Origin: Octopus sinensis | Taxonomy: Eukaryota | Direction of reading: 5' to 3' | Length of the DNA: 64,000 nucleotides | Assembly (NCBI RefSeq): GCF_006345805.1 | Contig: NC_043023.1 | Coordinates: forward strand, 20,150,001-20,214,000 | Shown here: one piece after another, positions 2,831-38,019 of the stretch | Layout of the letters: each line of letters opens with the position of its first letter | Numbering within the stretch: position 1 is the first letter of the stretch | Position numbers and translations under genes: made by a program | The notes under the pieces: model-generated | The model's database searches: none | What the model was told of the DNA's origin: nothing | What the model saw: the letters and a program-made list of their open reading frames with translations, nothing else

Positions 2831-3444
2831 ATATATGTACACATGCGCACACATCATAAATGGTTGTTAAATGATTGTAGTTAATATACTTGTTTTATGT
2901 ACATATATGTCTGGGCGTGTGTGTATGTGTATATATATATTATATATATATATATATATATACACACGTATATATGTATTTATTATTGTCCTTGTATATG
3001 TTGTCCACCTGTTGCTTTCATAGATTTAAATCATTGTTACTAAGTTTTCAAACCAGTTCATATCTTCAATCTCTTTTCTCTGTTTTTTTTTTTCTTTCTC
3101 TCCTCTAAATTATCTTTATCTGCATATATTTCTTTCATCGTTATCATTGTCATAATTATTGTTGATAATAATCGTCTTTTTTTTTTTTTTCACCAGTTCA
3201 TGTATCTTTTTGCCTGTTTAAATTTATTTAAAAAAAAAAAAAAGCACTTTTTCAATATTGTTTATATATGTATATATGTATGTGTATATTTGTATATATT
3301 TATACATATATATTTATATATATATATATATATATTTGTCGTTATTATTAATATTATTAATTTCTATACATATATATATACATATATATACATATATATA
3401 TAGTTTTCTTGTAACTAAATGAATCTCGTGTCCGTGCTTTGCAG

Positions 3445-4792
3445 ACCATTCCTGCTACGTAGAGACGTGGGACTAATTTGAGAGCTTCATTGCACCACGG
3501 CTTAAGATCTCTTCAGCCTACCTTTGAGCTTCTACTAAGTGTTGATCATCGTTGATTTGAGTGAGTTCAACCGCACTCCCAGTGAAGCTTCTAGCCAGTC
3601 GGCCCGCTGGCCTCCATAGATTTCAGCTCCTCGAAACATCTAATATATAAGATATATATATATCTATATATATATATATATATGCATATATATATATACA
3701 TATATATTATGTGTGAATGTATATGTATATTTATATATTTTCTTTTAAGAATTCTTCCAAAAAAAAAAACAAAAAACAAAGCTACACAAACCTAACGCAG
3801 ACCGTCCCAGCTGCCTGCCTGCCTACCAGACAAGTTAATGCTGCTCCTTTCTTCTACTCGGGCCTTTTGGTTGATCGAAATCTTCAGAGAGAGAGAGAGA
3901 GAGATCTTCATAGTCCAGCCTCTTCTCGAGCTACTGTCTTCCGTCTCGACTCGACTCGACTCGAAATTGATTAGAGATCAACTACGTTTGTTTTTTTTTT
4001 TTTTTGTTTTTTTTTTTTTTTCCTTCCTCTCTCCCCCCCTCCCATCTTAGGTGTCTGGTGGCCGTTCACAGAGCGACTCGACACGCATCGACGACAAGAA
4101 GACACGTCATGATTTGATTTCATTTATCGATATATAATCTGCCAGATTTTGTGGTTTTTTCCCCCCTCCCCCTAAACAAAAGAGAGAAACTTATATATAT
4201 ATTAAAAAAAAAAAAATTAAAAAACAAAGCAGTGACCATCACTACAGAGGCAGCAAGAGCAGACATCATACCTACTTATCTAGACATCGTTTTGAGAATG
4301 ATCCGGCGAGAGAGAGAGAGAGAGAGACACACACATACACGCATATATTCTGCAGCATATTGAGTTCTTCAAACAACCAGTTATTCGCATTGATATGCTT
4401 AAACGAAATCATAAAATATATTCATTAATTTGTGTATATAAAAAGAAAAAAAAAACTGACAAACAATACAGATAAAAAGAATGCTTTTCATTCACTGAAG
4501 AATATAATTAATAAAAAGAAAGAAAACGGCTATGGGCTGGCTCTACACCCCTGTACCAGCCAGCTACTGATTTCTTTTTGTTTTGTTAAATATATTTTTT
4601 GGTTTATCAGTCGTCAATTCAGTCAGAAATTTAGGATTTTCCTTCGACTCCAGCTCAATTCGAACCCTCCTCCAGAAGAACTAGATACATATATGTGCGT
4701 GTACGTGTGTTCTCACATCATCGTTGAAAGATCGACCACCTTGTCTTGCATCTTTTAGAAACAAAACAAACAAAAAAACATTGCAAACGTGC
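3445..4792 (+). other. Candidate poison (PTC) cassette exon of the SR gene, with alternative acceptors at 3445 and 4051
   Basis: Acceptors tgctttgcag|3445 and a long pyrimidine tract ending tcttag|4051. Donor |gtaagt at 4793. In the phase-2 frame of the RS exon both acceptors reach TGA quickly (3479-3481 and 4115-4117). The unique sequence is rich in GAC/GAT/TCGAC words. Confidence 0.5.
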
Positions 4793-5879
4793 GTAAGTTT
4801 ATCACACTTTAGCACATGCCTGTATGTTATTTCTGCACTTCTTCTGCCCCATTCCCCTGGGCCCTTTTTATTTTAACTTCCCAAGTGGCTCCTCCATCCA
4901 ACCATTTTTCCTCGTCCTCATAATTTAGGCACCCATCTCTCTGTTAGCCCCCTTTCTCCCTCGAGTGGCCACAACTGGGGATTACATTTTTATGACGCTG
5001 CACTAGGAATCCCTGACCCTTTATTGACTAATTTCGGTAGGTCCTTGATTTCACATTGGGTTCTTCCATAACTTAAACACGTTAGCCGCCATGGCCTGTT
5101 ACTGGAACTGACTGATGGGGCCTTGTATTCTTTTGTTTCAGTCAATTGACTGTGGCCATGCTGGAGCACCACCTTTAGTCAAACAAATCGACCCCAGGAC
5201 TTATTCTTTGTAAGCCTTACTACTTATTCTATGTCTCTTTTGCTGAACCGCTAAGTTACACAGACATAAGCACCAACATTGGTTGTCAAATGTTGGTGGG
5301 GGAACATACACACACACACACGATGGGCTTCTTTCAGTTTCCGTCTACCAAACCCACTCAAGATTTTGGTCGGCCTGAGGCTACAGTAGAAGATACTTGC
5401 CCAAGGTGCCACGCAGTGGGACTGAACCCAGAACCATGTGGTTGGTAAATCCCTATCATATCTGCATAGTGTTTAATTACAAGGAAATGTATTGTTTTTT
5501 GCATTTTTACAATATTTCATAACTTTATCTTGTTTCAGTTATTAAACTGTGGCCATGCTGGGGCACCACGGTGAAGAATTTTTCTTGGTTTCAGTCAAAT
5601 GAATTGGCCCCAGTGCCTGTCTTTCTGTAAAGCCTGATACTTATTCTATCGGTTTCTTTTGCCAAACTGCTAAGTCGTGTGGATGTGAAGTGGCAGTGGA
5701 AGACAAATACACAGCCACCATCACACACGATGGGCTTCTTTCAGTTTCCTTCTACCAAATTCATTCACAAGGCTTTGGTCAGCCCAAGGCTATAGTAGAA
5801 GACAGTTGCTCAAAGTGCCATGCAGTGGGACTGAACCTGGAACCACACCTTTGCTTCATAATTAGACTTTAATATTTAT

Positions 5880-6410: not shown

Positions 6411-7177
6411 GGGTGTTTGTATCTTTTATGGCCATGCTGGGGCACCTCCTTGAAGAAATTTTAGTTGAATGAATCGACACCAGTTCTTCTATTAGACTGG
6501 TACTTATTCTGTCATTCTGCTTTGCTGAACTGCTAAGTTACAAGGCTGTAGACACCATCATCACTGGTGCAAGTTCAGGCAGTCACATATACTTTATACA
6601 CACACACATACGACGGGCTTCTTTCAGTTTCCATCTACCAGATCCACTCACGAGGCTTTGGTCAGCCCAAGGTTATAATACAAGACACTTGCACAAAGTG
6701 CCATGCAGTGGGACTGAACCCAGAATCATGTGGTTGCAAAGCAAACATCTTACCCCACAGCCATGCCTGTTCTTTGTGTGTGTTTATATATTATACATAT
6801 GTATTCCTTATATGGTGTGTGTGTGTTTGTATATACACACACAAATCCATATAAATATATATATACGCTTGTCTGAGGGATTTAGAGTGTGAAGCTAATC
6901 CCTCTTGAAATCTAATATTTTGGTGTTGAAACTTAAAAGTTAAGTTTTTAGGGAGTTTAAAAAAAAAAAAAATCCCCCTACCCCCTTCACGAGTAATTTA
7001 GGGTATGCAGACCTCTTTCTTTTGTTGCCTTTCTCCCAGCCTGGGTCCTTATTCAATGGCCACTGCCCATTTCCAGTCATTGTTTTAGGTGCCATGCCCA
7101 GTGTTTAGGGGGTCAGCTTGTGTCCTGCAGGTGTCGTTGGGTAAGCATTGATTAGTGTCTGTTTGCTGTCCCTTCAG

Positions 7178-7279
7178 ATCCCGCTCTCGTTCGCGGTCCG
7201 GAAGGAGTTACTCCCGCAGCTGGAGTCGCAGTCGGAGTCATAGCCGCTCCCCCCGGAGGGCCAGCAGAAGCCACAGCAG
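7178..7279 (+). CDS. Internal RS-domain exon of an SR splicing factor (SRSF3/SRSF7-like by inference)
   Basis: Flanked by ccttcag| and |gtaaga; 102 nt, phase 2-2. Encodes (R)SRSRSRSGRSYSRSWSRSRSHSRSPRRASRSHS(R). RRM/zinc-knuckle exons and the later RS exons were not found in the window. Confidence 0.8.
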
Positions 7280-7628
7280 GTAAGATCAAACAATTGATGA
7301 CAACATTTTCCTTCTTCTTCTTCTTCTTCTTCTGGTCGGTATGTTGTTTCCTATTTGCCTCAAGAATTCAAAGAAAATGGCTTCGATTTCCTTCTTGAAG
7401 CTTTTGTGACTTTATTCTTTACTCTTTTACTTGTTTCAGTCATTTGACTGCGGCCATGCTGGAGCACAGCCTTTTTAATCGAGCAACTCGACCCCCCAGG
7501 ACTTATTCTTTTTGTAAGCCCAGTACTTATTCTATCGGTCTCTTTTGCCGAACCGCTAAGTAACGGGGACATAAACACACCAGCATCGGTTGTCAAGTGA
7601 TGTTGGGGGGACAAACACACACACACAA

Positions 7629-9000: not shown

Positions 9001-10853
9001 TTTTTCTTGTATATTTTCAGGAATTAAAACTTTATTAGAAGTCAGTCTTAAATGTAAGTACTCTCACCTTCAACTTCTTCTGGTTTTATTCTTTCTTGTA
9101 AAGTTTTGCTCTGTTTCTACCCAAATCATACCCTAGTTTCATAAACTGCTCTAAGGTTTGTTTTCTTCTATATATCAACATCATCTTTTAGTGTGCAATT
9201 TCCTCACTGACGTGGGGTTAGGGTACCACAGTTTAAGAGGAGCTGCTAAGGCCAGGAGTCACACCAGTTTCTATGGCTGCATATGCCACCTAATGCCAAC
9301 TACATTACAGTGTGTACTGGATGCGTCTTTTTGTGAGCCCTCAACATATTAATCCAATTATGCCCGAAATGAAATAAAAATTTGAATTTTCTTGTTACAT
9401 TCACAATCATCATCATCATCGTTTAATGTCCGTTCTCCATGCTAGCATGGGTTGGATGGTTCGACCGGGGATCTGGAAAGCCAGAAGGCTGCACCAGGCT
9501 CCAGTCTGATCTGGCAGTGTTTCTACAGCTGGATGCCCTTCCTAACGCCAACCACTCCGTGAGTGTAGTGAGTGCTTTTTACGTACCACCTGCACAGATG
9601 CCAGGCGAGGCTGGCAACGGCCACGGTCGGATTGGTGCATTTTACGTGCCACCGGCACGGAAGCCAGTCGAGGCGGCACTGGCATCGGCCACGAGTCGGA
9701 TAGTGCTTTTTACGTACCACCAGTCCAGGGGTCCTGGCTGGTTCAATTCGATTTCAATTTCACTTGCCCCAACATGTCTTCGCAAGCAAAGGGGGTTGGC
9801 ATGGGTGCCTGTCGTCGGATGAGGTTCTATATCGACTTCGCTTGCCTCAACAGGTCTTTGTGTCCATGTATAAATAAATGGAAAAAAATGGCTTTGATGC
9901 CAAATATTGCTGGATAAATTATTCTTCTTTATCTTCAGAAAGGTTTTTGATGCCTAAATTTATGAAACCATATGAATATTTTCATCGTTTATGTGATTTA
10001 GTAAGTTTCTTATCTGAATCTATTGCATAAATTTGGTCTCCAAGCAAAACCAATTATAGGTAAATGCTACAAAATTTAGTTATGCTCTTAGTTAATTAAG
10101 AGATGTATTTCTAATCAAAATAAACCTCTTGTGCGTTTCAATTGAATTCCAGCATAATCATAAATTTACACTCTTTATTCATTGATCCATTGTGATTTTT
10201 GGAACCCTTAAATCTGTTGCATGATTTTTGTCTCAAAGCAAATCTAATTACAGGTAAATTCAATAAAATAATATAAAACTAGTGGGACCCATGAATACTT
10301 CATGGAATTAATGGTAAACCTTTTGGGTTATTTCTGCAAACTTCTAAAAACCCGAAAGCGTGGCTTGTGTTATGCCTGTATCAAAAGATAGTCCGTCATC
10401 TGCTAATCATTGAAAAGCGAAGGAAACTGGAATATGATGATTACTTAATGCTGCTTGACTGGCATGTAAAAAGCAGCCGCTATACTTGCAGAGTGGTTGG
10501 TGTTATAGAGGGCATCCAGCTGTAGAAACCACGCCAAATCAAATTGGAGCCTGGTGCAGCCTCTTGGCTTGCCAGCCCTCAGTCAAACCGTCCAACCCAT
10601 GCCAGCATGGAAAGCGGAATTTGATGATGATGATGCTTTATTCACAATTTTATAGACTTAATACACAGCACTCTTCCCCTCATCTTTCCCTTCAGCCAAT
10701 CATATGAAGGCATTACAGACAGGCTAAATAACTAAGGATTAAAACTTAGTTAAAAAGACTTGTACATTTCTACTTCAGCTAATCACATGAAAGCATTAAG
10801 AATGGGCTCAGTAACAGAGGAACAAGCAGAATTGTTATAAGATTGAATCTTGT

Positions 10854-11606
10854 TTAACCCTTTCGTTACCAAACCCGGCTGAACCTGGCCCAGGCTCCAA
10901 TTACAAATGTTCTGAATTAAAATCTTTCACCAGACCTTAGTCACTTTATGTTCCTAACACTGGCCTTTAAATATGGTTTCTGATTATAAATATCTTGGGT
11001 CATACATATCATCATCTGGAAAAGACTTTCTAACTAGAAAGGGTATGGCCTGGTCAGCCTGTAATAACATGCATAAGATCTGGTCATCAAATCTAAGTAG
11101 AGACTTCAAACTTGAAATATTCAAAGCCACAGTCGAACCAATTCTACTATATGGCTCAGAAACCTGGACGTTATCAAAGAAGCTTGAGAGGCGATTGGAT
11201 GGAACCTACACTCGCCTCCTTATGAGAGCTCAAAATCTCTCGTGGAAGTGCCATCCAACCAAAATGCAAATATATGGGAAATTACCACCTGTGTCATCTC
11301 TTGTGAAAGGTAGGAGAGTCCAGTTTGCTGGACATTGTTGTAGAGCTGAAAACGAAGCAATTTCTATTCTTCTCCTCTGGAAGCCATCTACTCGCAATAC
11401 CAGAGGGCGCACACTCTCCTACCCTGATGTAATCTCCAGGGATACAGGCATCCAGCAACAGGACCTCCGTAATGCTATGATGGACCGTGAAGTCTGGCGT
11501 AACATAGTAAATTCCATTGTCTCGACCACGGTCGAACATTGATGATGATAACGATGTTATTTCACACAGAGCTTCTCAAAATAAATACAGTAGCGAAAGG
11601 GTTGAA
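10854..11606. mobile_element. piggyBac-type TTAA MITE (interrupted by RTE); relatives at 909-1137 and 51762-51992
   Basis: Ends TTAA-CCCTTT(CGTTAC)...(GTAACG)AAAGGG-TTAA; the internal sequence matches the reverse complement of 51762-51992. Confidence 0.7.
10975..11556 (+). mobile_element. 5'-truncated RTE-clade LINE nested in a TTAA MITE
   Basis: YKYLGS, ILLYGSETWTL, RRVQFAGHC, AMMDREVWR; the ORF is open to its stop and is followed by a (TGA)n tail. Confidence 0.85.
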
Positions 11607-30797: not shown

Positions 30798-31073
30798 GCA
30801 CATTAACCGGCCTAACCCACAACAGCAACGGTGTCTAGCTGCCAGTGGGAGCATACTACAATGCAGACAGTTCGTAAATTTGTTTTGTTCATTGTTTCTC
30901 GCACGAAAGTCTTTTTCCATGAAGACACACACACACGCACGCATAAATGCACTCGAAAATCCTTGCATCCTTTCCACTAATCCAGCTGACATTTATATAT
31001 ATACACCCACCCCCCACTAACCCTCCCCCCGTCCCCGACCGACCCCCCTCCCCGCTCCCCACCCACGCCCACC

Positions 31074-32849
31074 TCATCGACTACTCAAGCGTTTGTAGCC
31101 CTGGTGTATGTCTATCTCGTCCTTGAATGCCAAGAGTCCAAGCTGTGCGTGTGACGCCTCGTTCAGGGCCTTCGACTGGATGCAGCTGCGATATTGCTTC
31201 GGTGTGAGGCTGGGGTCGCAGGTCTTCCCATGGTACAGGTGGAATATCCCTGGATCCGTTGCCCTTATCACCAGGTACTTACTGCGTACGTACTTCTGGT
31301 AGAGCAGCACATCCTCGCCGCCCCAGCCGGTGATCTGCTCGTCGAATCCACGGATGGTGAGGAAGTCCGACTTGTACTGACACGTCATTCCGTAACCAAA
31401 GTCCCTCCAGAACCCCGTGTCCCTCGATATTACCAATTGGTCCTTCTCTGGGGGTATGAGCATGTCATGGAGCGAGTAGACAACGTTGGGGTTATACAGG
31501 CTGAACACGATTGGGTAGTAGACCCGTTTGTCTGGGGTTGCGTTCAGTCGACATCGCTCTAAGAAATCCACACCGAACACAATGTCGACATCACAGAAGA
31601 ACATGAGTACATTGCTGTTGCGCCAATTGAGGGCACCAACCTGCAGCCCTTGGCCACGCGAGAACTTCTCCTTCAGGCTGATCAGTTTGATGTATTTAAA
31701 CTTGTAAGAGTGGGCCATGCCTGACAGCATGTCCTTGACAGTGGAGAGTCCCTCCTTGCCAAAGTACACAACCGTGAGAAACACTCGTTTGTCCTGCAGA
31801 ACGCAAGTGCGCACAAAACGGTCAAGGAACAGGCGAAAGGTCTCCGTCCGTCCGGAGAGTGGAAGGATTAGGTTGATCCATTCTTTGTTCGTATTCACCC
31901 AGTTTTTCGTGATCAACTGAATGGGGCCGAAAGGCCGTATCACGGAGAGCTTTGAGTAGTAGTTTTTCATCCCAGGTCGGTCAATGTCGTGGAAGTAGAG
32001 CTCATAGTGGGAACCGCTTGTTGGATCGATACGGTAAATGCCCTCGGCAAAATTCTCGGCACCATACTGGCCCATCCCTTTACGGTTTTCATTCAGTTGG
32101 TCAACAGAGAACTGAATCACTTCGCTGAGGTCTTTCTTCTTGAAGCCAATTGGTTTCTCGACGACCCTCTTGCCAAGTCCAGGTTCTACGAGGAAGATTC
32201 GAGTTGCTGAAAAACGATTAAAAGGAATGAGTTCATACTCGGACTTGAGTGGCACTCCGTGGAGTATCTCTGCTGCCCTTATCTGTTCCAAGAAAAACCG
32301 AGTGTAATTGAAACTGTTGTTTACGTCGAGCGTTTGGACCTTGCTCTCAGTTGGAATATTCTTCTTGCCTTCGGTTTCATCTTTGCTGTTGGCGCCTTGC
32401 TCGTTTTTATTCTTAATTTCACCATTATCATCATCATCGTCGTCGTCGTCATTATTGTTGTTGTTTTTGTTGTTGCTTTCAGCAGCAGAGATTTGCAAAG
32501 TCAGGTTCTTCGTCTTGAGGAACGCCGTCTTGAGGGCAGCTTCCAGGAACCGAATCTGTTTCCGCAACTTGGTCGTCTCTCGGTTGTAGCGCTTGGTCAA
32601 CACCATGAGCTTCTCGTGTTCGACAGCAGCAGAGAGCGTGTTTGCAGAGGACTTGTTGTTGACACCCGCCCGGCGGGCCCGGTTTGCTGGCAGCACATCC
32701 GCACCCCCGGCGGCAGCGGCGGCGGCAGCAGCTTCCTCGGCCTGCTGCCGGAAATAATGGTCAATGTTGAGCCCGCAACGAGCAATCAACATCAACGTGA
32801 CCACACTGAGTGTGAAAAGTACCAGTAATATACGAGGCATGGTCTTCAT
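31074..32849 (-). CDS. CSGALNACT: Chondroitin sulfate N-acetylgalactosaminyltransferase (CSGALNACT1/2 ortholog), 591 aa, uninterrupted CDS
   Basis: Type II membrane layout: N-terminal hydrophobic ILLVLFTLSVVTLMLIA, then a coiled-coil stem. Family motifs follow: EGIYRIDPTSGSHYELYF, RPFGP, LTVVYFGKEGL, FFCDVDI (DxD), YYPIVFSLYNP, GFWRDFGYGMTCQYKSDF, GWGGEDV, CIQSKALNEASH. An in-frame upstream TAA at 32895-32897 supports ATG 32849 as the start. Confidence 0.95.
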   Translation of the reverse strand: MKTMPRILLVLFTLSVVTLMLIARCGLNIDHYFRQQAEEAAAAAAAAGGADVLPANRARRAGVNNKSSANTLSAAVEHEKLMVLTKRYNRETTKLRKQIRFLEAALKTAFLKTKNLTLQISAAESNNKNNNNNDDDDDDDDNGEIKNKNEQGANSKDETEGKKNIPTESKVQTLDVNNSFNYTRFFLEQIRAAEILHGVPLKSEYELIPFNRFSATRIFLVEPGLGKRVVEKPIGFKKKDLSEVIQFSVDQLNENRKGMGQYGAENFAEGIYRIDPTSGSHYELYFHDIDRPGMKNYYSKLSVIRPFGPIQLITKNWVNTNKEWINLILPLSGRTETFRLFLDRFVRTCVLQDKRVFLTVVYFGKEGLSTVKDMLSGMAHSYKFKYIKLISLKEKFSRGQGLQVGALNWRNSNVLMFFCDVDIVFGVDFLERCRLNATPDKRVYYPIVFSLYNPNVVYSLHDMLIPPEKDQLVISRDTGFWRDFGYGMTCQYKSDFLTIRGFDEQITGWGGEDVLLYQKYVRSKYLVIRATDPGIFHLYHGKTCDPSLTPKQYRSCIQSKALNEASHAQLGLLAFKDEIDIHQGYKRLSSR

Positions 32850-33666
32850 GTTTGGAGGACGGCATAGCCAAGTGTCTCTGAGTGGCTGGAGGGGTTAATG
32901 GGTGAGTGACTCAGCTGTTGAGTAGTTGAGGGTTTGAGTGACTCAGTGACTCAGTCACTTGGTTTTTGAGTAGCTCAGGGGTTGAGCGAGTGGGCCTTAG
33001 ACACTGAGTTAATACAGTAGTTGAACAATCCAGTTGGTGAGAGATTCAGTGGCTCAGTTGCTCAGGGGTCGAGGGTGCATATCTTAGCTTTTGGGTGAGT
33101 CAGTAACCAAGACACTAAGTGATTGGGTGAACGTGCCTCAGTCGTTGAGCGAATGTGCCTCAGTCACTGAGTGAACGTGCCTCACTTGTTGAGTGACCCA
33201 GCTACTGAGTGGCTCTGTGATCAAATGGGTGTATTGTAGTTACTGAGGGGCCTCAATGACTGAGTTGCTCATTTGTCGAAAAGTTTAGTGCTTGAGTGAG
33301 CATGTATCAGCTGTTGAGTGACTCAGTGGCCAAGTGAGTGTACCTGAGTTGTTGAGTTGCTCAATGAGTGAGCAGATCAGTAATTGAGGAAGTGTGTGCC
33401 TCAGTAGTTGAGCAACCCAGCTGTTGAGCAGCTCATTGTTCAAAGGAGGTGTTGAGAGATTCAGCAGGGAGGGTCAGTTGAGTATTTCCCTGAGTGAGTG
33501 ACTCGGTTATACAGAGGTCCTGCAGCTGAGTGAATGGAACTGAGTATCCGTGCATCAAGAAAAGCTGATTTTCTCAGTGTCACCGGTGGTCCAGCAACAT
33601 ACGGGGTGCTGTGCTCGAGTGGCTGAGGGACCTGGGAAGAGTGGTTTCTATGTTGACGGCCAAAAC
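32850..33666 (-). other. 5'UTR portion of the CSGALNACT coding exon (817 nt) downstream of a splice acceptor
   Basis: The minus strand reads ACTAAT (branch-like, 33699-33694), a polypyrimidine tract, then CAG ending at 33667. The upstream non-coding exon(s) were not identified. Confidence 0.7.
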
Positions 33667-36984: not shown

Positions 36985-37141
36985 CCTACATAACGATATG
37001 TGTATATATATAGATATGTGTATATATATAGATATGTGTATATATATAGATATGTGTATTATAGGGCGGTATATAATATATATATAGATATGTGTAATGT
37101 ATATATATATATTAATATATATATATATATATAGATATGTG

Positions 37142-37175
<34 letters not shown>

Positions 37176-37843
37176 TATGTGTATGTGTATATATATATAT
37201 ATATATATAGATATTGTGTATGTATATATATATATAGATATGTGTATATATATATATATATATATAGATATGTGTATATGTATATATATAATATAGATAT
37301 GTGTATTATATATATATATAGATATGTGTAATATGTATAATAATATATATAGATATGTGTATATATATCATATATATACATATAGATATGTGTATATATA
37401 TATAAGATACATATGATATTGTATATATATATATATATATATAGATATGTGTATATATATATATATATAATATATATAATAGATATGTGTATATATATAT
37501 ATATATATATAGATATGTGTCAATATATATATATATATATAGATATAGATATGTGTATATCTATATATATATATATAGATATGTGTATATAATATATATA
37601 TAATATAGATATAGATATGTTATATATATATATATATATATATATATAGATATGTGTTATATAGATATGTGTATTATAATATATATATATTATATGTGTA
37701 TATATATATGTGTATAATATATATATATATATGTGTATATATATTATAATATATATATATATATATATATAATATATATGTATATATATATTATATAGAT
37801 ATGTGTATATATATATATATGTGTATATATATATATATATAAG

Positions 37844-37874
<31 letters not shown>

Positions 37875-38019
37875 GATATGTGTATTATATATATATATAG
37901 ATATGTGTGCTATATATCTATATATAGATATGTTGTATTATATATATAATTATATATATATATATATAGATATGTGTATATATATATGTGTATATATATA
38001 TGTGTATATATATATGTGT

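What the first reader, a model, noticed from the sequence alone, without database searches (positions are those of the whole stretch)
3445..4792. Candidate ultraconserved-type poison exon upstream of an RS exon (SRSF3/7-like autoregulation)
Seen: a non-repeat island with two acceptors (3445, 4051), one strong donor (GTAAGT at 4793) and early TGA stops in the RS-exon phase. It has dense TCGAC/GACGAC/GAT/TCAAC words, e.g. CTCGACTCGACTCGACTCGA at about 3945 and GCGACTCGACACGCATCGACGAC at about 4072. Established: vertebrate SRSF3 and SRSF7 autoregulate through a PTC exon in the intron just before the first RS exon, and SRSF7 binds GAY-type motifs. Inference: a cephalopod version with two alternative poison acceptors.
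Basis: partly seen in the sequence, partly recalled or inferred. Interest (0 to 1): 0.7.

Follow-up and report, generated by a model that had tools for sequence, protein, structure and literature searches.

The report
Likely poison exon in octopus SRSF7
Inside the octopus gene for the splicing factor SRSF7 lies a stop-codon-carrying candidate extra exon whose two splice sites match those in chitons, snails and mussels, so it is probably an old self-limiting switch of a known kind, although no RNA data could be checked.

Summary
The window is Octopus sinensis CM016885.1:20150001-20214000. The RS exon (7178-7279) belongs to the single-copy SRSF7 orthologue, which has an RRM, a CCHC knuckle and a short RS tail. 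The flagged island lies in the intron after the zinc-knuckle exon, where human SRSF7 keeps its poison cassette exon.

- **Boundaries.** The acceptor at 3445 sits in the motif CCSTGCWTTGCAG|AC. That motif occurs once, on the sense strand, in the same intron of Octopus (2 species), Babylonia, Gigantopelta and Liolophura, with a near copy in Mytilus. The donor GTGC|GTAAGT (4789-4798) is identical in Octopus, Liolophura and Mytilus.
- **Reading frame.** Every lineage has an in-frame stop 1-22 codons after the acceptor.
- **Exon body.** The exon bodies do not align between classes, or between Octopus and Argonauta. They share retained CpG, an excess of C over G, and sense-strand CNYC words, which are the SRSF3/SRSF7-RRM motif. 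GAY words are not enriched.
- **Constraint.** Between the two Octopus species the island changes about one third as fast as the flanking intron.

So this is not "ultraconserved" and not GAY-dense. It is very probably a real, ancient alternative exon that truncates the protein before its RS domain. Inclusion, NMD and autoregulation remain untested because no RNA evidence was reachable.

The parts
3100..3444 (+). Upstream intronic flank, conserved between O. sinensis and O. bimaculoides (4.6% substitutions against about 10-11% in the wider intron). It contains a branch-point-like TAACTAAAT about 30 nt before the AG.
3432..3446 (+). Conserved 3' splice-site motif CCGTGCTTTGCAG|AC (mollusc consensus CCSTGCWTTGCAG|AC). 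The AG is at 3443-3444.
   Evidence: It is the only match in the 64-kb window, with 0 of 100 shuffles matching. The same motif occurs once, on the + strand, in the same intron of O. bimaculoides, Babylonia, Gigantopelta and Liolophura, and the 10-nt core also in Mytilus.
3445..4792 (+). Candidate poison cassette exon, long form (1348 nt, = 1 mod 3). It is bounded by the two cross-class conserved splice sites.
3479..3481 (+). First in-frame stop (TGA) after the 3445 acceptor. The predicted product ends ...RHSK-PFLLRRDVGLI* and so has the RRM and zinc knuckle but no RS domain.
   Evidence: the same tail is encoded in O. bimaculoides
3987..4050 (+). Long T/C-rich pyrimidine tract plus AG (4049-4050) of a possible internal alternative acceptor.
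   Evidence: 18 of 19 pyrimidines, among the 6 best of 3324 AG sites in the window. An Argonauta island starts with a similar C-rich tract plus TAG.
4051..4792 (+). Candidate short form of the exon (742 nt, = 1 mod 3). The first in-frame stop is TGA at 4115-4117.
   Evidence: It is not checkable in O. bimaculoides because of an N gap.
4073..4106 (+). GAC/CGAC cluster GCGACTCGACACGCATCGACGACAAGAAGACACG. This is the densest GAC cluster on the + strand of the window.
4789..4798 (+). Conserved 5' splice-site motif GTGC|GTAAGT. The exon ends at 4792.
   Evidence: It is the only match in the window, against 0.06 expected. The identical 10-mer is the first GTAAGT after the conserved acceptor in Liolophura and Mytilus. 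Gigantopelta and Argonauta have TGT|GTAAGT. It is also conserved in O. bimaculoides, together with about 55 nt of downstream intron.
7178..7279 (+). RS exon of SRSF7, encoding SRSRSRSGRSYSRSWSRSRSHSRSPRRASRSHS. Both flanking introns are phase 2.
9021..9027 (+). Start of the last coding exon (G AAT TAA). The stop codon is at 9025-9027.

Best explanation
Window 3445-4792 is an alternative cassette exon of the octopus SRSF7 gene. It may also have a shorter form starting at 4051. It lies in the intron between the zinc-knuckle exon and the first RS exon.

When the exon is spliced in, the reading frame meets a TGA after 11 codons (21 codons for the short form). That stop lies far upstream of two further exon junctions. 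The mRNA then either is degraded by nonsense-mediated decay or encodes an RRM plus zinc-knuckle protein without an RS domain.

The exon body is packed on the sense strand with CNYC words, the motif bound by the SRSF3/SRSF7-type RRM, and has a local GAC cluster. The likely logic is negative feedback: more SRSF3/7-family protein gives more inclusion and less productive mRNA.

**Shown:** gene identity, intron position, conserved splice-site motifs at both ends across four mollusc classes, early stops, strand-specific motif content, CpG retention, and reduced substitution rate.

**Inferred:** actual inclusion in mRNA, NMD, and regulation by the gene's own protein.
For: **Gene and position.**
- The gene is SRSF7: the RS exon is an exact match to P0001 (168 aa, RRM_1 plus zf-CCHC), which is identical in O. 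sinensis, O. bimaculoides and Argonauta.
- Exon map: CDS exon 1, an exon with the RRM end and zinc knuckle, a 20.9-kb intron, then the RS exon. This is the same place as human SRSF7 intron 3 with its poison cassette exon (PMC10533491).

**Acceptor.**
- An unbiased all-against-all BLAST of the homologous introns gave a single cross-class hit. It was an 18-nt exact match between Gigantopelta and Liolophura that is itself a 3' splice site.
- Intron 1 and the intron after the RS exon gave zero cross-class hits.
- Over 508 kb searched on both strands there were 7 such hits. Five are this site in five species, one is a second copy in the same Babylonia intron, and one is unrelated.

**Donor.** GTGC|GTAAGT is shared by Octopus, Liolophura and Mytilus as the first GTAAGT downstream of the acceptor.

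**Frame.** The intron is phase 2 in all five species checked, with stops 1-22 codons after the acceptor.

**Exon body.**
- CpG o/e is 1.5-4.7 times that of the rest of the intron in all 6 lineages.
- CNYC runs at 43-79/kb on the sense strand, against 2-7/kb antisense and 6-22/kb in the rest of the intron. Shuffle z-scores are 5.2 in Octopus and 4.4 in Argonauta.
- CNYC is the SRSF3 motif, and the motif of SRSF7 with an inactive zinc knuckle (PMC7948361).

**Constraint.** O. sinensis against O. bimaculoides shows 3.8% substitutions in the island and 10.3% in the flanks (Fisher p = 1.7e-8). The rate rises again shortly after the donor.

**Other protostomes.** Truncated RS-less isoforms that diverge at this same junction are annotated in Tribolium, Biomphalaria and Ostrea. 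A cDNA-like contig of an unidentified organism (its protein aligns best with bivalve sequences) joins exons 1 and 2 to a non-coding tail, with a stop 6 codons after the junction.
Against: - No transcript evidence for octopus could be reached.
- The cluster look-up lists one RefSeq protein per Octopus species, neither named as an isoform. No truncated octopus protein appears among the best hits of the 5.8-billion-protein search.
- The predicted Mytilus truncated isoform is not in that database either.
- At 1348 nt the octopus exon is 2.4-4.4 times longer than in the other four species that carry the conserved acceptor (304-552 nt). A sizeable part of it is low-complexity sequence.
- The donor has a weak exonic context.
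- Argonauta lacks the conserved acceptor motif altogether.
- GAY, the full-length SRSF7 motif, is not enriched.
- High CpG o/e also marks young repeats in the same intron, so it is not specific on its own.
- NMD rules in molluscs are not established.
Confidence: 0.7

Rival explanations
1. The island is used as an alternative terminal exon, or as part of a retained intron, rather than as a cassette. Transcripts would enter at 3445 or 4051, or simply fail to splice, and end at an internal poly(A) site. The result would be a stable RS-less SRSF7 isoform rather than an NMD target.
For: - The 3' half is A/T-rich, with AATAAA at 4510 and ATTAAA at 4201 and 4216.
- Human SRSF7 also uses intron-3 retention (PMC10533491, PMC12179342).
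- The cDNA-like contig L011 runs more than 400 nt into its non-coding tail without a further coding exon.
Against: - Poly(A) hexamers are not enriched: about 1.1 AATAAA are expected in 1348 nt.
- The donor GTGC|GTAAGT at the 3' end is conserved across three classes. That is hard to explain if nothing is spliced from it.
Confidence: 0.12
2. The conserved AG and GT define a decoy (non-productive) exon or an intronic splicing control element. It would engage spliceosome components and SR proteins to hold intron 2 unspliced (a detained intron), without the exon appearing in mature mRNA.
For: - Only the splice-site motifs are conserved, together with a motif-rich body that is free to change in sequence.
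- The donor has a deliberately poor exonic context.
- Vertebrate SRSF7 uses intron-retained architectural RNAs with repeated SRSF7 sites for homeostasis (PMC12179342).
Against: - Truncated protein isoforms diverging exactly at this junction are annotated in other protostomes.
- A spliced cDNA-like contig exists. This argues that a downstream exon is really joined to the zinc-knuckle exon in at least some lineages.
Confidence: 0.1
3. The island is ordinary intronic DNA and the splice-like motifs are there by chance.
For: - Single GTAAGT sites and pyrimidine-rich AGs are common: 14 GTAAGT on the + strand and 6 equally pyrimidine-rich acceptors in the window.
- Stops in a 37% GC sequence are inevitable.
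Against: - The 15-nt acceptor motif and the 10-nt donor motif each occur once per locus, in the same intron, strand and order, in four mollusc classes.
- Shuffles give 0.00 and 0.06 expected matches in the window.
- There is about one unrelated hit in 508 kb.
- The substitution rate is reduced (p = 1.7e-8).
Confidence: 0.03

Closest known systems
Human/mouse SRSF7 (9G8) poison cassette exon in intron 3
   Same: - The gene family is the same (RRM plus CCHC knuckle plus RS).
- The position is the same: the intron after the zinc-knuckle exon and before the RS domain (PMC10533491).
- Inclusion gives a premature stop and removes the RS domain.
- The exon carries binding motifs of the SRSF3/7 family.
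   Different: - The vertebrate element is highly conserved or ultraconserved over its length. The mollusc exon keeps only about 15 nt at the acceptor and about 10 nt at the donor, and its body cannot be aligned between classes or even between Octopus and Argonauta.
- GAY is not enriched here, whereas CNYC is.
- Inclusion and NMD have been shown experimentally in mammals and not here.
- Orthology of the two exons was not tested, because no vertebrate sequence of the element was available.
SRSF3 (SRp20) exon 4 autoregulatory poison exon
   Same: - SRSF3 is the sister gene of SRSF7.
- It has a PTC exon before the RS-coding exons, included in response to the protein itself (PMC12179342, PMC4379411).
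- The CNYC-type words enriched in the mollusc exon are the SRSF3 motif (PMC7948361).
   Different: - SRSF3 has no zinc knuckle.
- The host gene here is the knuckle-bearing orthologue.
- Feedback is untested here.
SRSF5 ancient unproductive splicing (Lareau and Brenner 2015, PMC4379411)
   Same: It is a poison event held at one intron position over very long evolutionary distances, while the sequence itself is not ultraconserved outside vertebrates.
   Different: - It belongs to a different SR subfamily and a different intron.
- That paper stresses that events in most SR paralogues arose independently.
- It does not treat SRSF7 (0 mentions).
TRA2B exon 2 and other SR-family poison exons
   Same: A cassette exon with stops, rich in the factor's own binding sites, used for homeostasis (PMC11791180).
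   Different: The gene is unrelated, the motif is different (GAA-rich), and it has been shown experimentally.

Membership tests
SR-gene poison cassette exon (SRSF3/SRSF7 type, AS-NMD autoregulation) | The host gene is an SRSF3/7-family SR protein. | tested here: met
   The RS exon matches P0001 exactly. P0001 has RRM_1 (66.7 bits) and zf-CCHC (21.0 bits against a 20.8 cut-off). Its best relatives are SRSF7 / x16 across animals.
SR-gene poison cassette exon (SRSF3/SRSF7 type, AS-NMD autoregulation) | The exon lies in the intron just before the RS-coding exons (after the zinc-knuckle exon in SRSF7). | tested here: met
   Exon mapping by tblastn in O. sinensis, O. bimaculoides, Argonauta, Babylonia, Gigantopelta, Liolophura and Mytilus. 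Human arrangement from PMC10533491.
SR-gene poison cassette exon (SRSF3/SRSF7 type, AS-NMD autoregulation) | The exon is bounded by functional 3' and 5' splice sites. | tested here: inconclusive
   Function was not assayed. At sequence level, AG and GT are present and both motifs are conserved across four mollusc classes. This is strong indirect evidence of use.
SR-gene poison cassette exon (SRSF3/SRSF7 type, AS-NMD autoregulation) | Inclusion introduces a premature in-frame stop upstream of later exon junctions. | tested here: met
   TGA at 3479-3481, or at 4115-4117 for the short form. Junctions at 4792/7178 and 7279/9021 lie downstream. Stops follow 1-22 codons after the acceptor in the other species.
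SR-gene poison cassette exon (SRSF3/SRSF7 type, AS-NMD autoregulation) | The exon is alternatively included in mRNA. | not testable with these tools
   No octopus RNA data were reachable and no truncated octopus isoform is in the protein database. The only indirect evidence is truncated isoforms at this junction in other protostomes and one spliced cDNA-like contig of unknown origin.
SR-gene poison cassette exon (SRSF3/SRSF7 type, AS-NMD autoregulation) | The inclusion isoform is degraded by NMD. | not testable with these tools
   This needs NMD inhibition or UPF1 depletion followed by isoform quantification.
SR-gene poison cassette exon (SRSF3/SRSF7 type, AS-NMD autoregulation) | Inclusion is promoted by the gene's own protein, which binds the exon. 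| tested here: inconclusive
   The CNYC motif is enriched 2-10-fold on the sense strand only in all six lineages, and there is a local GAC cluster at 4073-4106. GAY and GAYGAY are not enriched. Binding was not assayed.
Ultraconserved / highly conserved element of vertebrate SR genes | A long stretch (hundreds of nt) of near-perfect identity between distant species. | tested here: not met
   There is no alignable similarity between the Octopus island and the Argonauta intron, and no shared non-trivial 12-mer. No cross-class block exists other than the 18-nt acceptor. Between the two Octopus species the island still shows 3.8% substitutions.

The most novel reading that the evidence does not exclude
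The mollusc exon would be orthologous to the vertebrate SRSF7 (and perhaps SRSF3) poison exon. In that case a stop-carrying cassette exon already sat in the intron between the zinc knuckle and the RS domain in the bilaterian ancestor. It would have been kept for more than 500 million years by selection on its splice sites and motif content alone, with vertebrate ultraconservation as a later overlay. Argonauta would then show how such an exon can replace its acceptor without losing the function.
Probability: 0.3. Interest if true: 0.65.

Novelty: new member of a known kind. Interest (0 to 1): 0.5.

Why it matters
- **Deep persistence.** Poison exons that let splicing factors limit their own level are best known from vertebrates, where they coincide with ultraconserved DNA. 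Here a candidate sits at the same gene position in molluscs and is recognisable by a short, class-spanning splice-site signature. If real, this kind of feedback in the SRSF3/7 family can persist over very deep time without any sequence ultraconservation.
- **A search handle.** The motif pair TGCWTTGCAG ... TGYGTAAGT gives a simple way to find the exon in other lophotrochozoan genomes.
- **Cephalopod RNA biology.** For cephalopods, whose RNA biology is unusual in other ways, it marks a concrete and testable regulatory exon in a core splicing factor.
- **Limits.** It is not a new mechanism, and nothing here shows that the exon is used in octopus.

Tried and rejected
1. **RRM or CCHC exons in the window.** None lie upstream of the island. 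They sit 14-16 kb before the window start.
2. **Octopus against Argonauta alignment.** I tried BLAST with DUST, then word size 7 without DUST, then shared 11-14-mers. Only microsatellites matched.
3. **O. bimaculoides for the 4051 acceptor.** The contig has an N gap exactly there.
4. **Loci that could not be fetched.** Sepia pharaonis (P0002), the shorter Ostrea and Biomphalaria isoforms, and Mya (P0046) are not on record.
5. **Truncated isoforms in the protein database.**
   - No truncated octopus isoform appears among the best hits.
   - The predicted Mytilus poison-tail protein returned only a genomic read-through ORF.
6. **Known families.** Rfam gave only sub-threshold microsatellite hits. 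Pfam found nothing on the island's open frames.
7. **GAY/GAYGAY/TCAAC enrichment as the explanation.** These words are not above background.
8. **Constraint from the two Argonauta haplotigs.** They are only about 1% divergent. The island shows 2 of 642 differences against 51 of 4196 in the flanks, which is too weak to use.
9. **The tail of the cDNA-like contig L011.** It did not align with any candidate exon; the best hit was E = 0.011 to Mytilus.
10. **Non-mollusc loci.** The bryozoan and fish loci lack the motif pair. The fish locus has tiny introns and is uninformative.
11. **Literature.** No paper in the held library describes a mollusc or cephalopod SRSF7 poison exon. Konigs et al. 2020 is not held.
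Full report
**1. What is there**

The coordinates in the finding are exact.
- AG at 3443-3444 gives an exon start at 3445.
- A roughly 60-nt T/C run followed by AG at 4049-4050 gives a start at 4051.
- GTAAGT lies at 4793-4798.
- The quoted strings lie at 3945 and 4073.

The only RS-rich open frame in the 64-kb window is 7152-7280. Read with its splice sites, it is a 102-nt exon at 7178-7279 (cag|A ... CAG|gtaaga) with phase 2 on both sides. No RRM or CCHC exon lies in the window.

**2. Which gene**

A search with the RS-exon peptide found one protein, P0001 (168 aa). Its C-terminus contains the exon's peptide exactly.
- It has RRM_1 and a CCHC knuckle.
- Its relatives across animals are SRSF7 / x16.
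- The cluster look-up shows no other isoform: one RefSeq accession per Octopus species, neither named as an isoform (XP_029652255.1 and XP_014782997.1). The protein is identical in Argonauta hians.

The genomic loci show that the window is Octopus sinensis CM016885.1:20150001-20214000, which is locus L001 position minus 26082.

The exon map is:
- CDS exon 1;
- an exon encoding the end of the RRM, the linker, the zinc knuckle and ...RYSKRHS;
- a 20.9-kb phase-2 intron (5.7 kb in O. bimaculoides, about 10.5 kb in Argonauta);
- the RS exon;
- a last exon starting at 9021 with G AAT TAA.

The island therefore sits 2.4 kb upstream of the first RS exon, in the intron that follows the zinc-knuckle exon. 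In human SRSF7 the zinc knuckle is in exon 3, and intron 3 holds the well-studied poison cassette exon (PMC10533491).

**3. Is the island more than chance? Sequence-only tests**

Taken singly, the splice-like sites are weak evidence.
- GTAAGT occurs 14 times on the + strand of the window.
- The donor's exonic side (TGC) is non-consensus, scoring 4.1 bits against 11.1 for the RS-exon donor.
- The 3445 acceptor has an ordinary pyrimidine tract.
- The 4051 acceptor is among the 6 most pyrimidine-rich of 3324 AGs, but the tract is a homopolymer-like run.
- Stops are inevitable in 37% GC sequence. In the entering phase they are TGA at 3479 and TGA at 4115.

- TCGAC/CGAC is in the top 2.5-2.8% of equal-sized windows, with four copies from one tandem repeat.
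- GACGAC occurs once.
- TCAAC, GAY and GAYGAY are at background.
- The densest GAC cluster on the + strand of the whole window does lie at 4075, just after the 4051 acceptor.

Other properties of the island:
- It has no second copy in the window, but a good part of it is microsatellite.
- CpG o/e is 0.9-1.1 across 3001-4500, against 0.2-0.4 in the flanks.
- Rfam and Pfam find nothing.

**4. Close comparison**

O. sinensis and O. bimaculoides align throughout this part of the intron.
- Substitutions are 3.8% in the island (3445-3978 plus 4686-4792), against 10.3% in the flanking intron (Fisher p = 1.7e-8). The RS exon shows 1.0%.
- The conserved block runs from about 3100 to about 55 nt past the donor, then drops to 11%.
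- The AG at 3445 and GTGC|GTAAGT are both conserved.
- The O. bimaculoides contig has an N gap over window 3979-4685, so the 4051 site cannot be compared.

**5. Distant comparison: not ultraconserved**

Argonauta encodes the identical protein, and its RS exon is 82.7% identical in DNA. Yet nothing in the island aligns to the Argonauta intron. This held with DUST, without it at word size 7, and by shared k-mers.

**6. The decisive result**

I fetched the SRSF7 loci of three more molluscs and mapped their exons. All have the same exon plan and a phase-2 intron at the same codon.
- Babylonia, a caenogastropod;
- Gigantopelta, a neomphaline gastropod;
- Liolophura, a chiton.

*Acceptor.* An all-against-all BLAST of the homologous introns gave one cross-class hit. 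It was an 18-nt exact match between Gigantopelta and Liolophura, CCCTGCATTGCAG|ACTTT, which is itself a 3' splice site.
- Searching the 18-mer with up to 4 mismatches gave a single hit in the 20,950-nt octopus intron: CCGTGCTTTGCAG|ACCAT at window 3432-3449.
- There was a single 3-mismatch hit in Babylonia, and none on any reverse strand of these introns.
- The degenerate core CCSTGCWTTGCAGAC occurs exactly once per locus, always on the + strand in this intron. It occurs once in the 64-kb window, with 0 of 100 shuffles giving a match.
- Mytilus, fetched afterwards, has CCATGCATTGCAG|AA in the same intron.
- The 10-mer TGCWTTGCAG occurs once in each of six loci and nowhere else in the 11 loci held.
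- Over 508 kb searched on both strands, hits with 4 or fewer mismatches number seven: this site in five species, a second copy in the same Babylonia intron, and one unrelated hit.
- Intron 1 and the intron after the RS exon give no cross-class BLAST hits at all.

*Donor.* The first GTAAGT downstream of the conserved acceptor in each species is listed below.

| Lineage | Donor context | Exon length (nt) |
|---|---|---|
| Octopus | GTGC\|GTAAGT | 1348 |
| Liolophura | GTGC\|GTAAGT | 304 |
| Mytilus | GTGC\|GTAAGT | 410 |
| Gigantopelta | TTGT\|GTAAGT | 552 |
| Babylonia | TTCC\|GTAAGT | 430 |

GTGCGTAAGT occurs once in the window, against 0.06 expected, and once in each of those loci.

*Frame.* In the entering frame, stops follow after 11 (Octopus), 3 (Babylonia), 1 (Gigantopelta), 16 (Liolophura) and 22 (Mytilus) codons.

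**7. The body of the exon**

The bodies do not align but share properties in all six lineages, Argonauta's island included.
- CpG o/e is 1.5-4.7 times that of the rest of the intron.
- GC skew is -0.15 to -0.38.
- Sense-strand words are enriched:
  - CTTC, 41 observed against 9.9 expected, with 5 on the other strand;
  - CATC, 42 against 10.8, with 3 on the other strand;
  - CGAC, 29 against 2.9;
  - CTTCA and TCATC.
- As a class, CNYC runs at 43-79 per kb on the sense strand, 2-7 per kb antisense, and 6-22 per kb in the rest of the intron.
- CNYC exceeds dinucleotide shuffles in Octopus (z = 5.2), Argonauta (4.4), Gigantopelta (2.9) and Mytilus (2.1).
- GAY shows no strand bias and no excess over shuffles.

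CNYC is the SRSF3 motif. SRSF7 with an inactive zinc knuckle also binds CNYC, while intact SRSF7 prefers GAY (PMC7948361).

**8. Argonauta and the second acceptor**

Argonauta lacks the conserved acceptor entirely: there is no T[TC]GCAG[AG] anywhere in the intron. It does have an island at L002 22804-23447 with these features:
- a C-rich pyrimidine tract followed by TAG|A;
- CpG o/e above 1.2;
- GACC/CGAC repeats;
- ATGT|GTAAGT at its end;
- a stop two codons in.

Its start resembles the octopus 4051 site in build: a C-rich tract, then TAG/AG, then a GAC-rich stretch. Low complexity prevents a claim of homology. This is compatible with an octopod-specific internal acceptor that Argonauta now uses alone. 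It is an inference only.

**9. Transcript-level hints from elsewhere**

- Annotated shorter isoforms in Tribolium (X2), Biomphalaria (X2) and Ostrea (X2) diverge from the full-length protein at this junction and lack the RS domain.
- A 932-nt ENA contig (L011) of an unidentified organism (its protein aligns best with bivalve sequences) is clearly spliced. Exons 1 and 2 are contiguous and continue into a non-coding tail with a stop after 6 codons and TCGAC/CATC-type words. The tail does not align with any candidate exon.
- No truncated octopus or Mytilus protein is in the database.

**10. Mechanism**

*Best reading (0.7).* This is a regulated cassette exon. Its inclusion places a stop shortly after the zinc knuckle, upstream of two more junctions. 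The transcript is then lost to NMD or yields an RS-less protein. Inclusion would be driven by SRSF3/7-family proteins bound to the CNYC-rich body, giving negative feedback.

*Status of the steps.* Sections 2-7 are shown. Inclusion, decay and feedback are inferred from the homologous vertebrate systems (PMC12179342, PMC10533491, PMC4379411).

*Rivals.*
- An alternative terminal exon or intron retention (0.12). The conserved donor argues against it.
- A decoy exon or detained-intron control element (0.10).
- Chance (0.03).

**11. Comparison and novelty**

It works like the vertebrate SRSF7 and SRSF3 poison exons and sits at the same gene position. It fails the "ultraconserved" criterion outright. 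Lareau and Brenner (PMC4379411) showed deep conservation of the SRSF5 event and stressed independent origins elsewhere. Their paper does not treat SRSF7. I found no paper on a mollusc or cephalopod SRSF7 poison exon in the held library. I rate it a new member of a known kind, of moderate interest. The more novel reading, orthology with the vertebrate exon and hence a bilaterian origin, is open (about 0.3).

Noticed in passing
window 9021-9060: The last coding exon (G AAT TAA, stop at 9025-9027) is followed 27 nt later by aat|GTAAGT at 9054. The SRSF7 3' UTR may therefore contain an intron, which would be another feature typical of NMD-regulated SR genes.
   Followed up: no
L001 12310-33259, L004 8505-14253, L002 17385-28170: The intron before the RS exon is 20.9 kb in O. 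sinensis, 5.7 kb in O. bimaculoides and about 10.8 kb in Argonauta. The extra O. sinensis DNA includes CpG-rich blocks (L001 16001-17000 and 20251-21750) that look like young repeat insertions.
   Followed up: partly
L004 10950-11714 (= window 3979-4685): The O. bimaculoides contig LGKD02092611.1 has a 765-nt run of N exactly over the low-complexity middle of the island, hiding the 4051 acceptor.
   Followed up: yes
L005 10568 and 11962: In Babylonia a TG[CT]GTAAGT lies about 100 nt upstream of the conserved acceptor. A second, degenerate acceptor-like copy (GCCTGCATTGCACAC) lies 1.3 kb downstream. Together they suggest a local duplication of the exon ends.
   Followed up: no
L011 (ENA ERZ14224630 NODE_22559), 88-932: This is a spliced cDNA-like contig of an unidentified organism; its protein aligns best with bivalve sequences. 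It encodes the RRM and zinc knuckle, then IYPLL*, followed by more than 400 nt of non-coding sequence rich in TCGAC/CGTCA/CATC words. It probably represents an SRSF7 unproductive isoform.
   Followed up: partly
L002 against L003: The two Argonauta hians loci carrying the identical SRSF7 gene differ by only about 1% in the aligned 5.4-kb stretch of the intron, plus indels. They are most likely haplotigs rather than paralogues.
   Followed up: partly
window 5130-5450, 5530-5850, 6429-6740, 7420-7620: Several copies of one interspersed repeat, which I take to be the octopus SINE (it contains TGTGGCCATGCTGGAGCACC), lie between the island and the RS exon. RT-like open frames lie at 1198-1566 and 10958-11539.
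   Followed up: no
window 37001-38000 and 31001-33000: One 1-kb stretch has GC 0.118 and GC skew 0.86, which looks like extreme simple sequence. A GC-rich block (0.50-0.54) lies at 31-33 kb and may belong to another gene's promoter.
   Followed up: no
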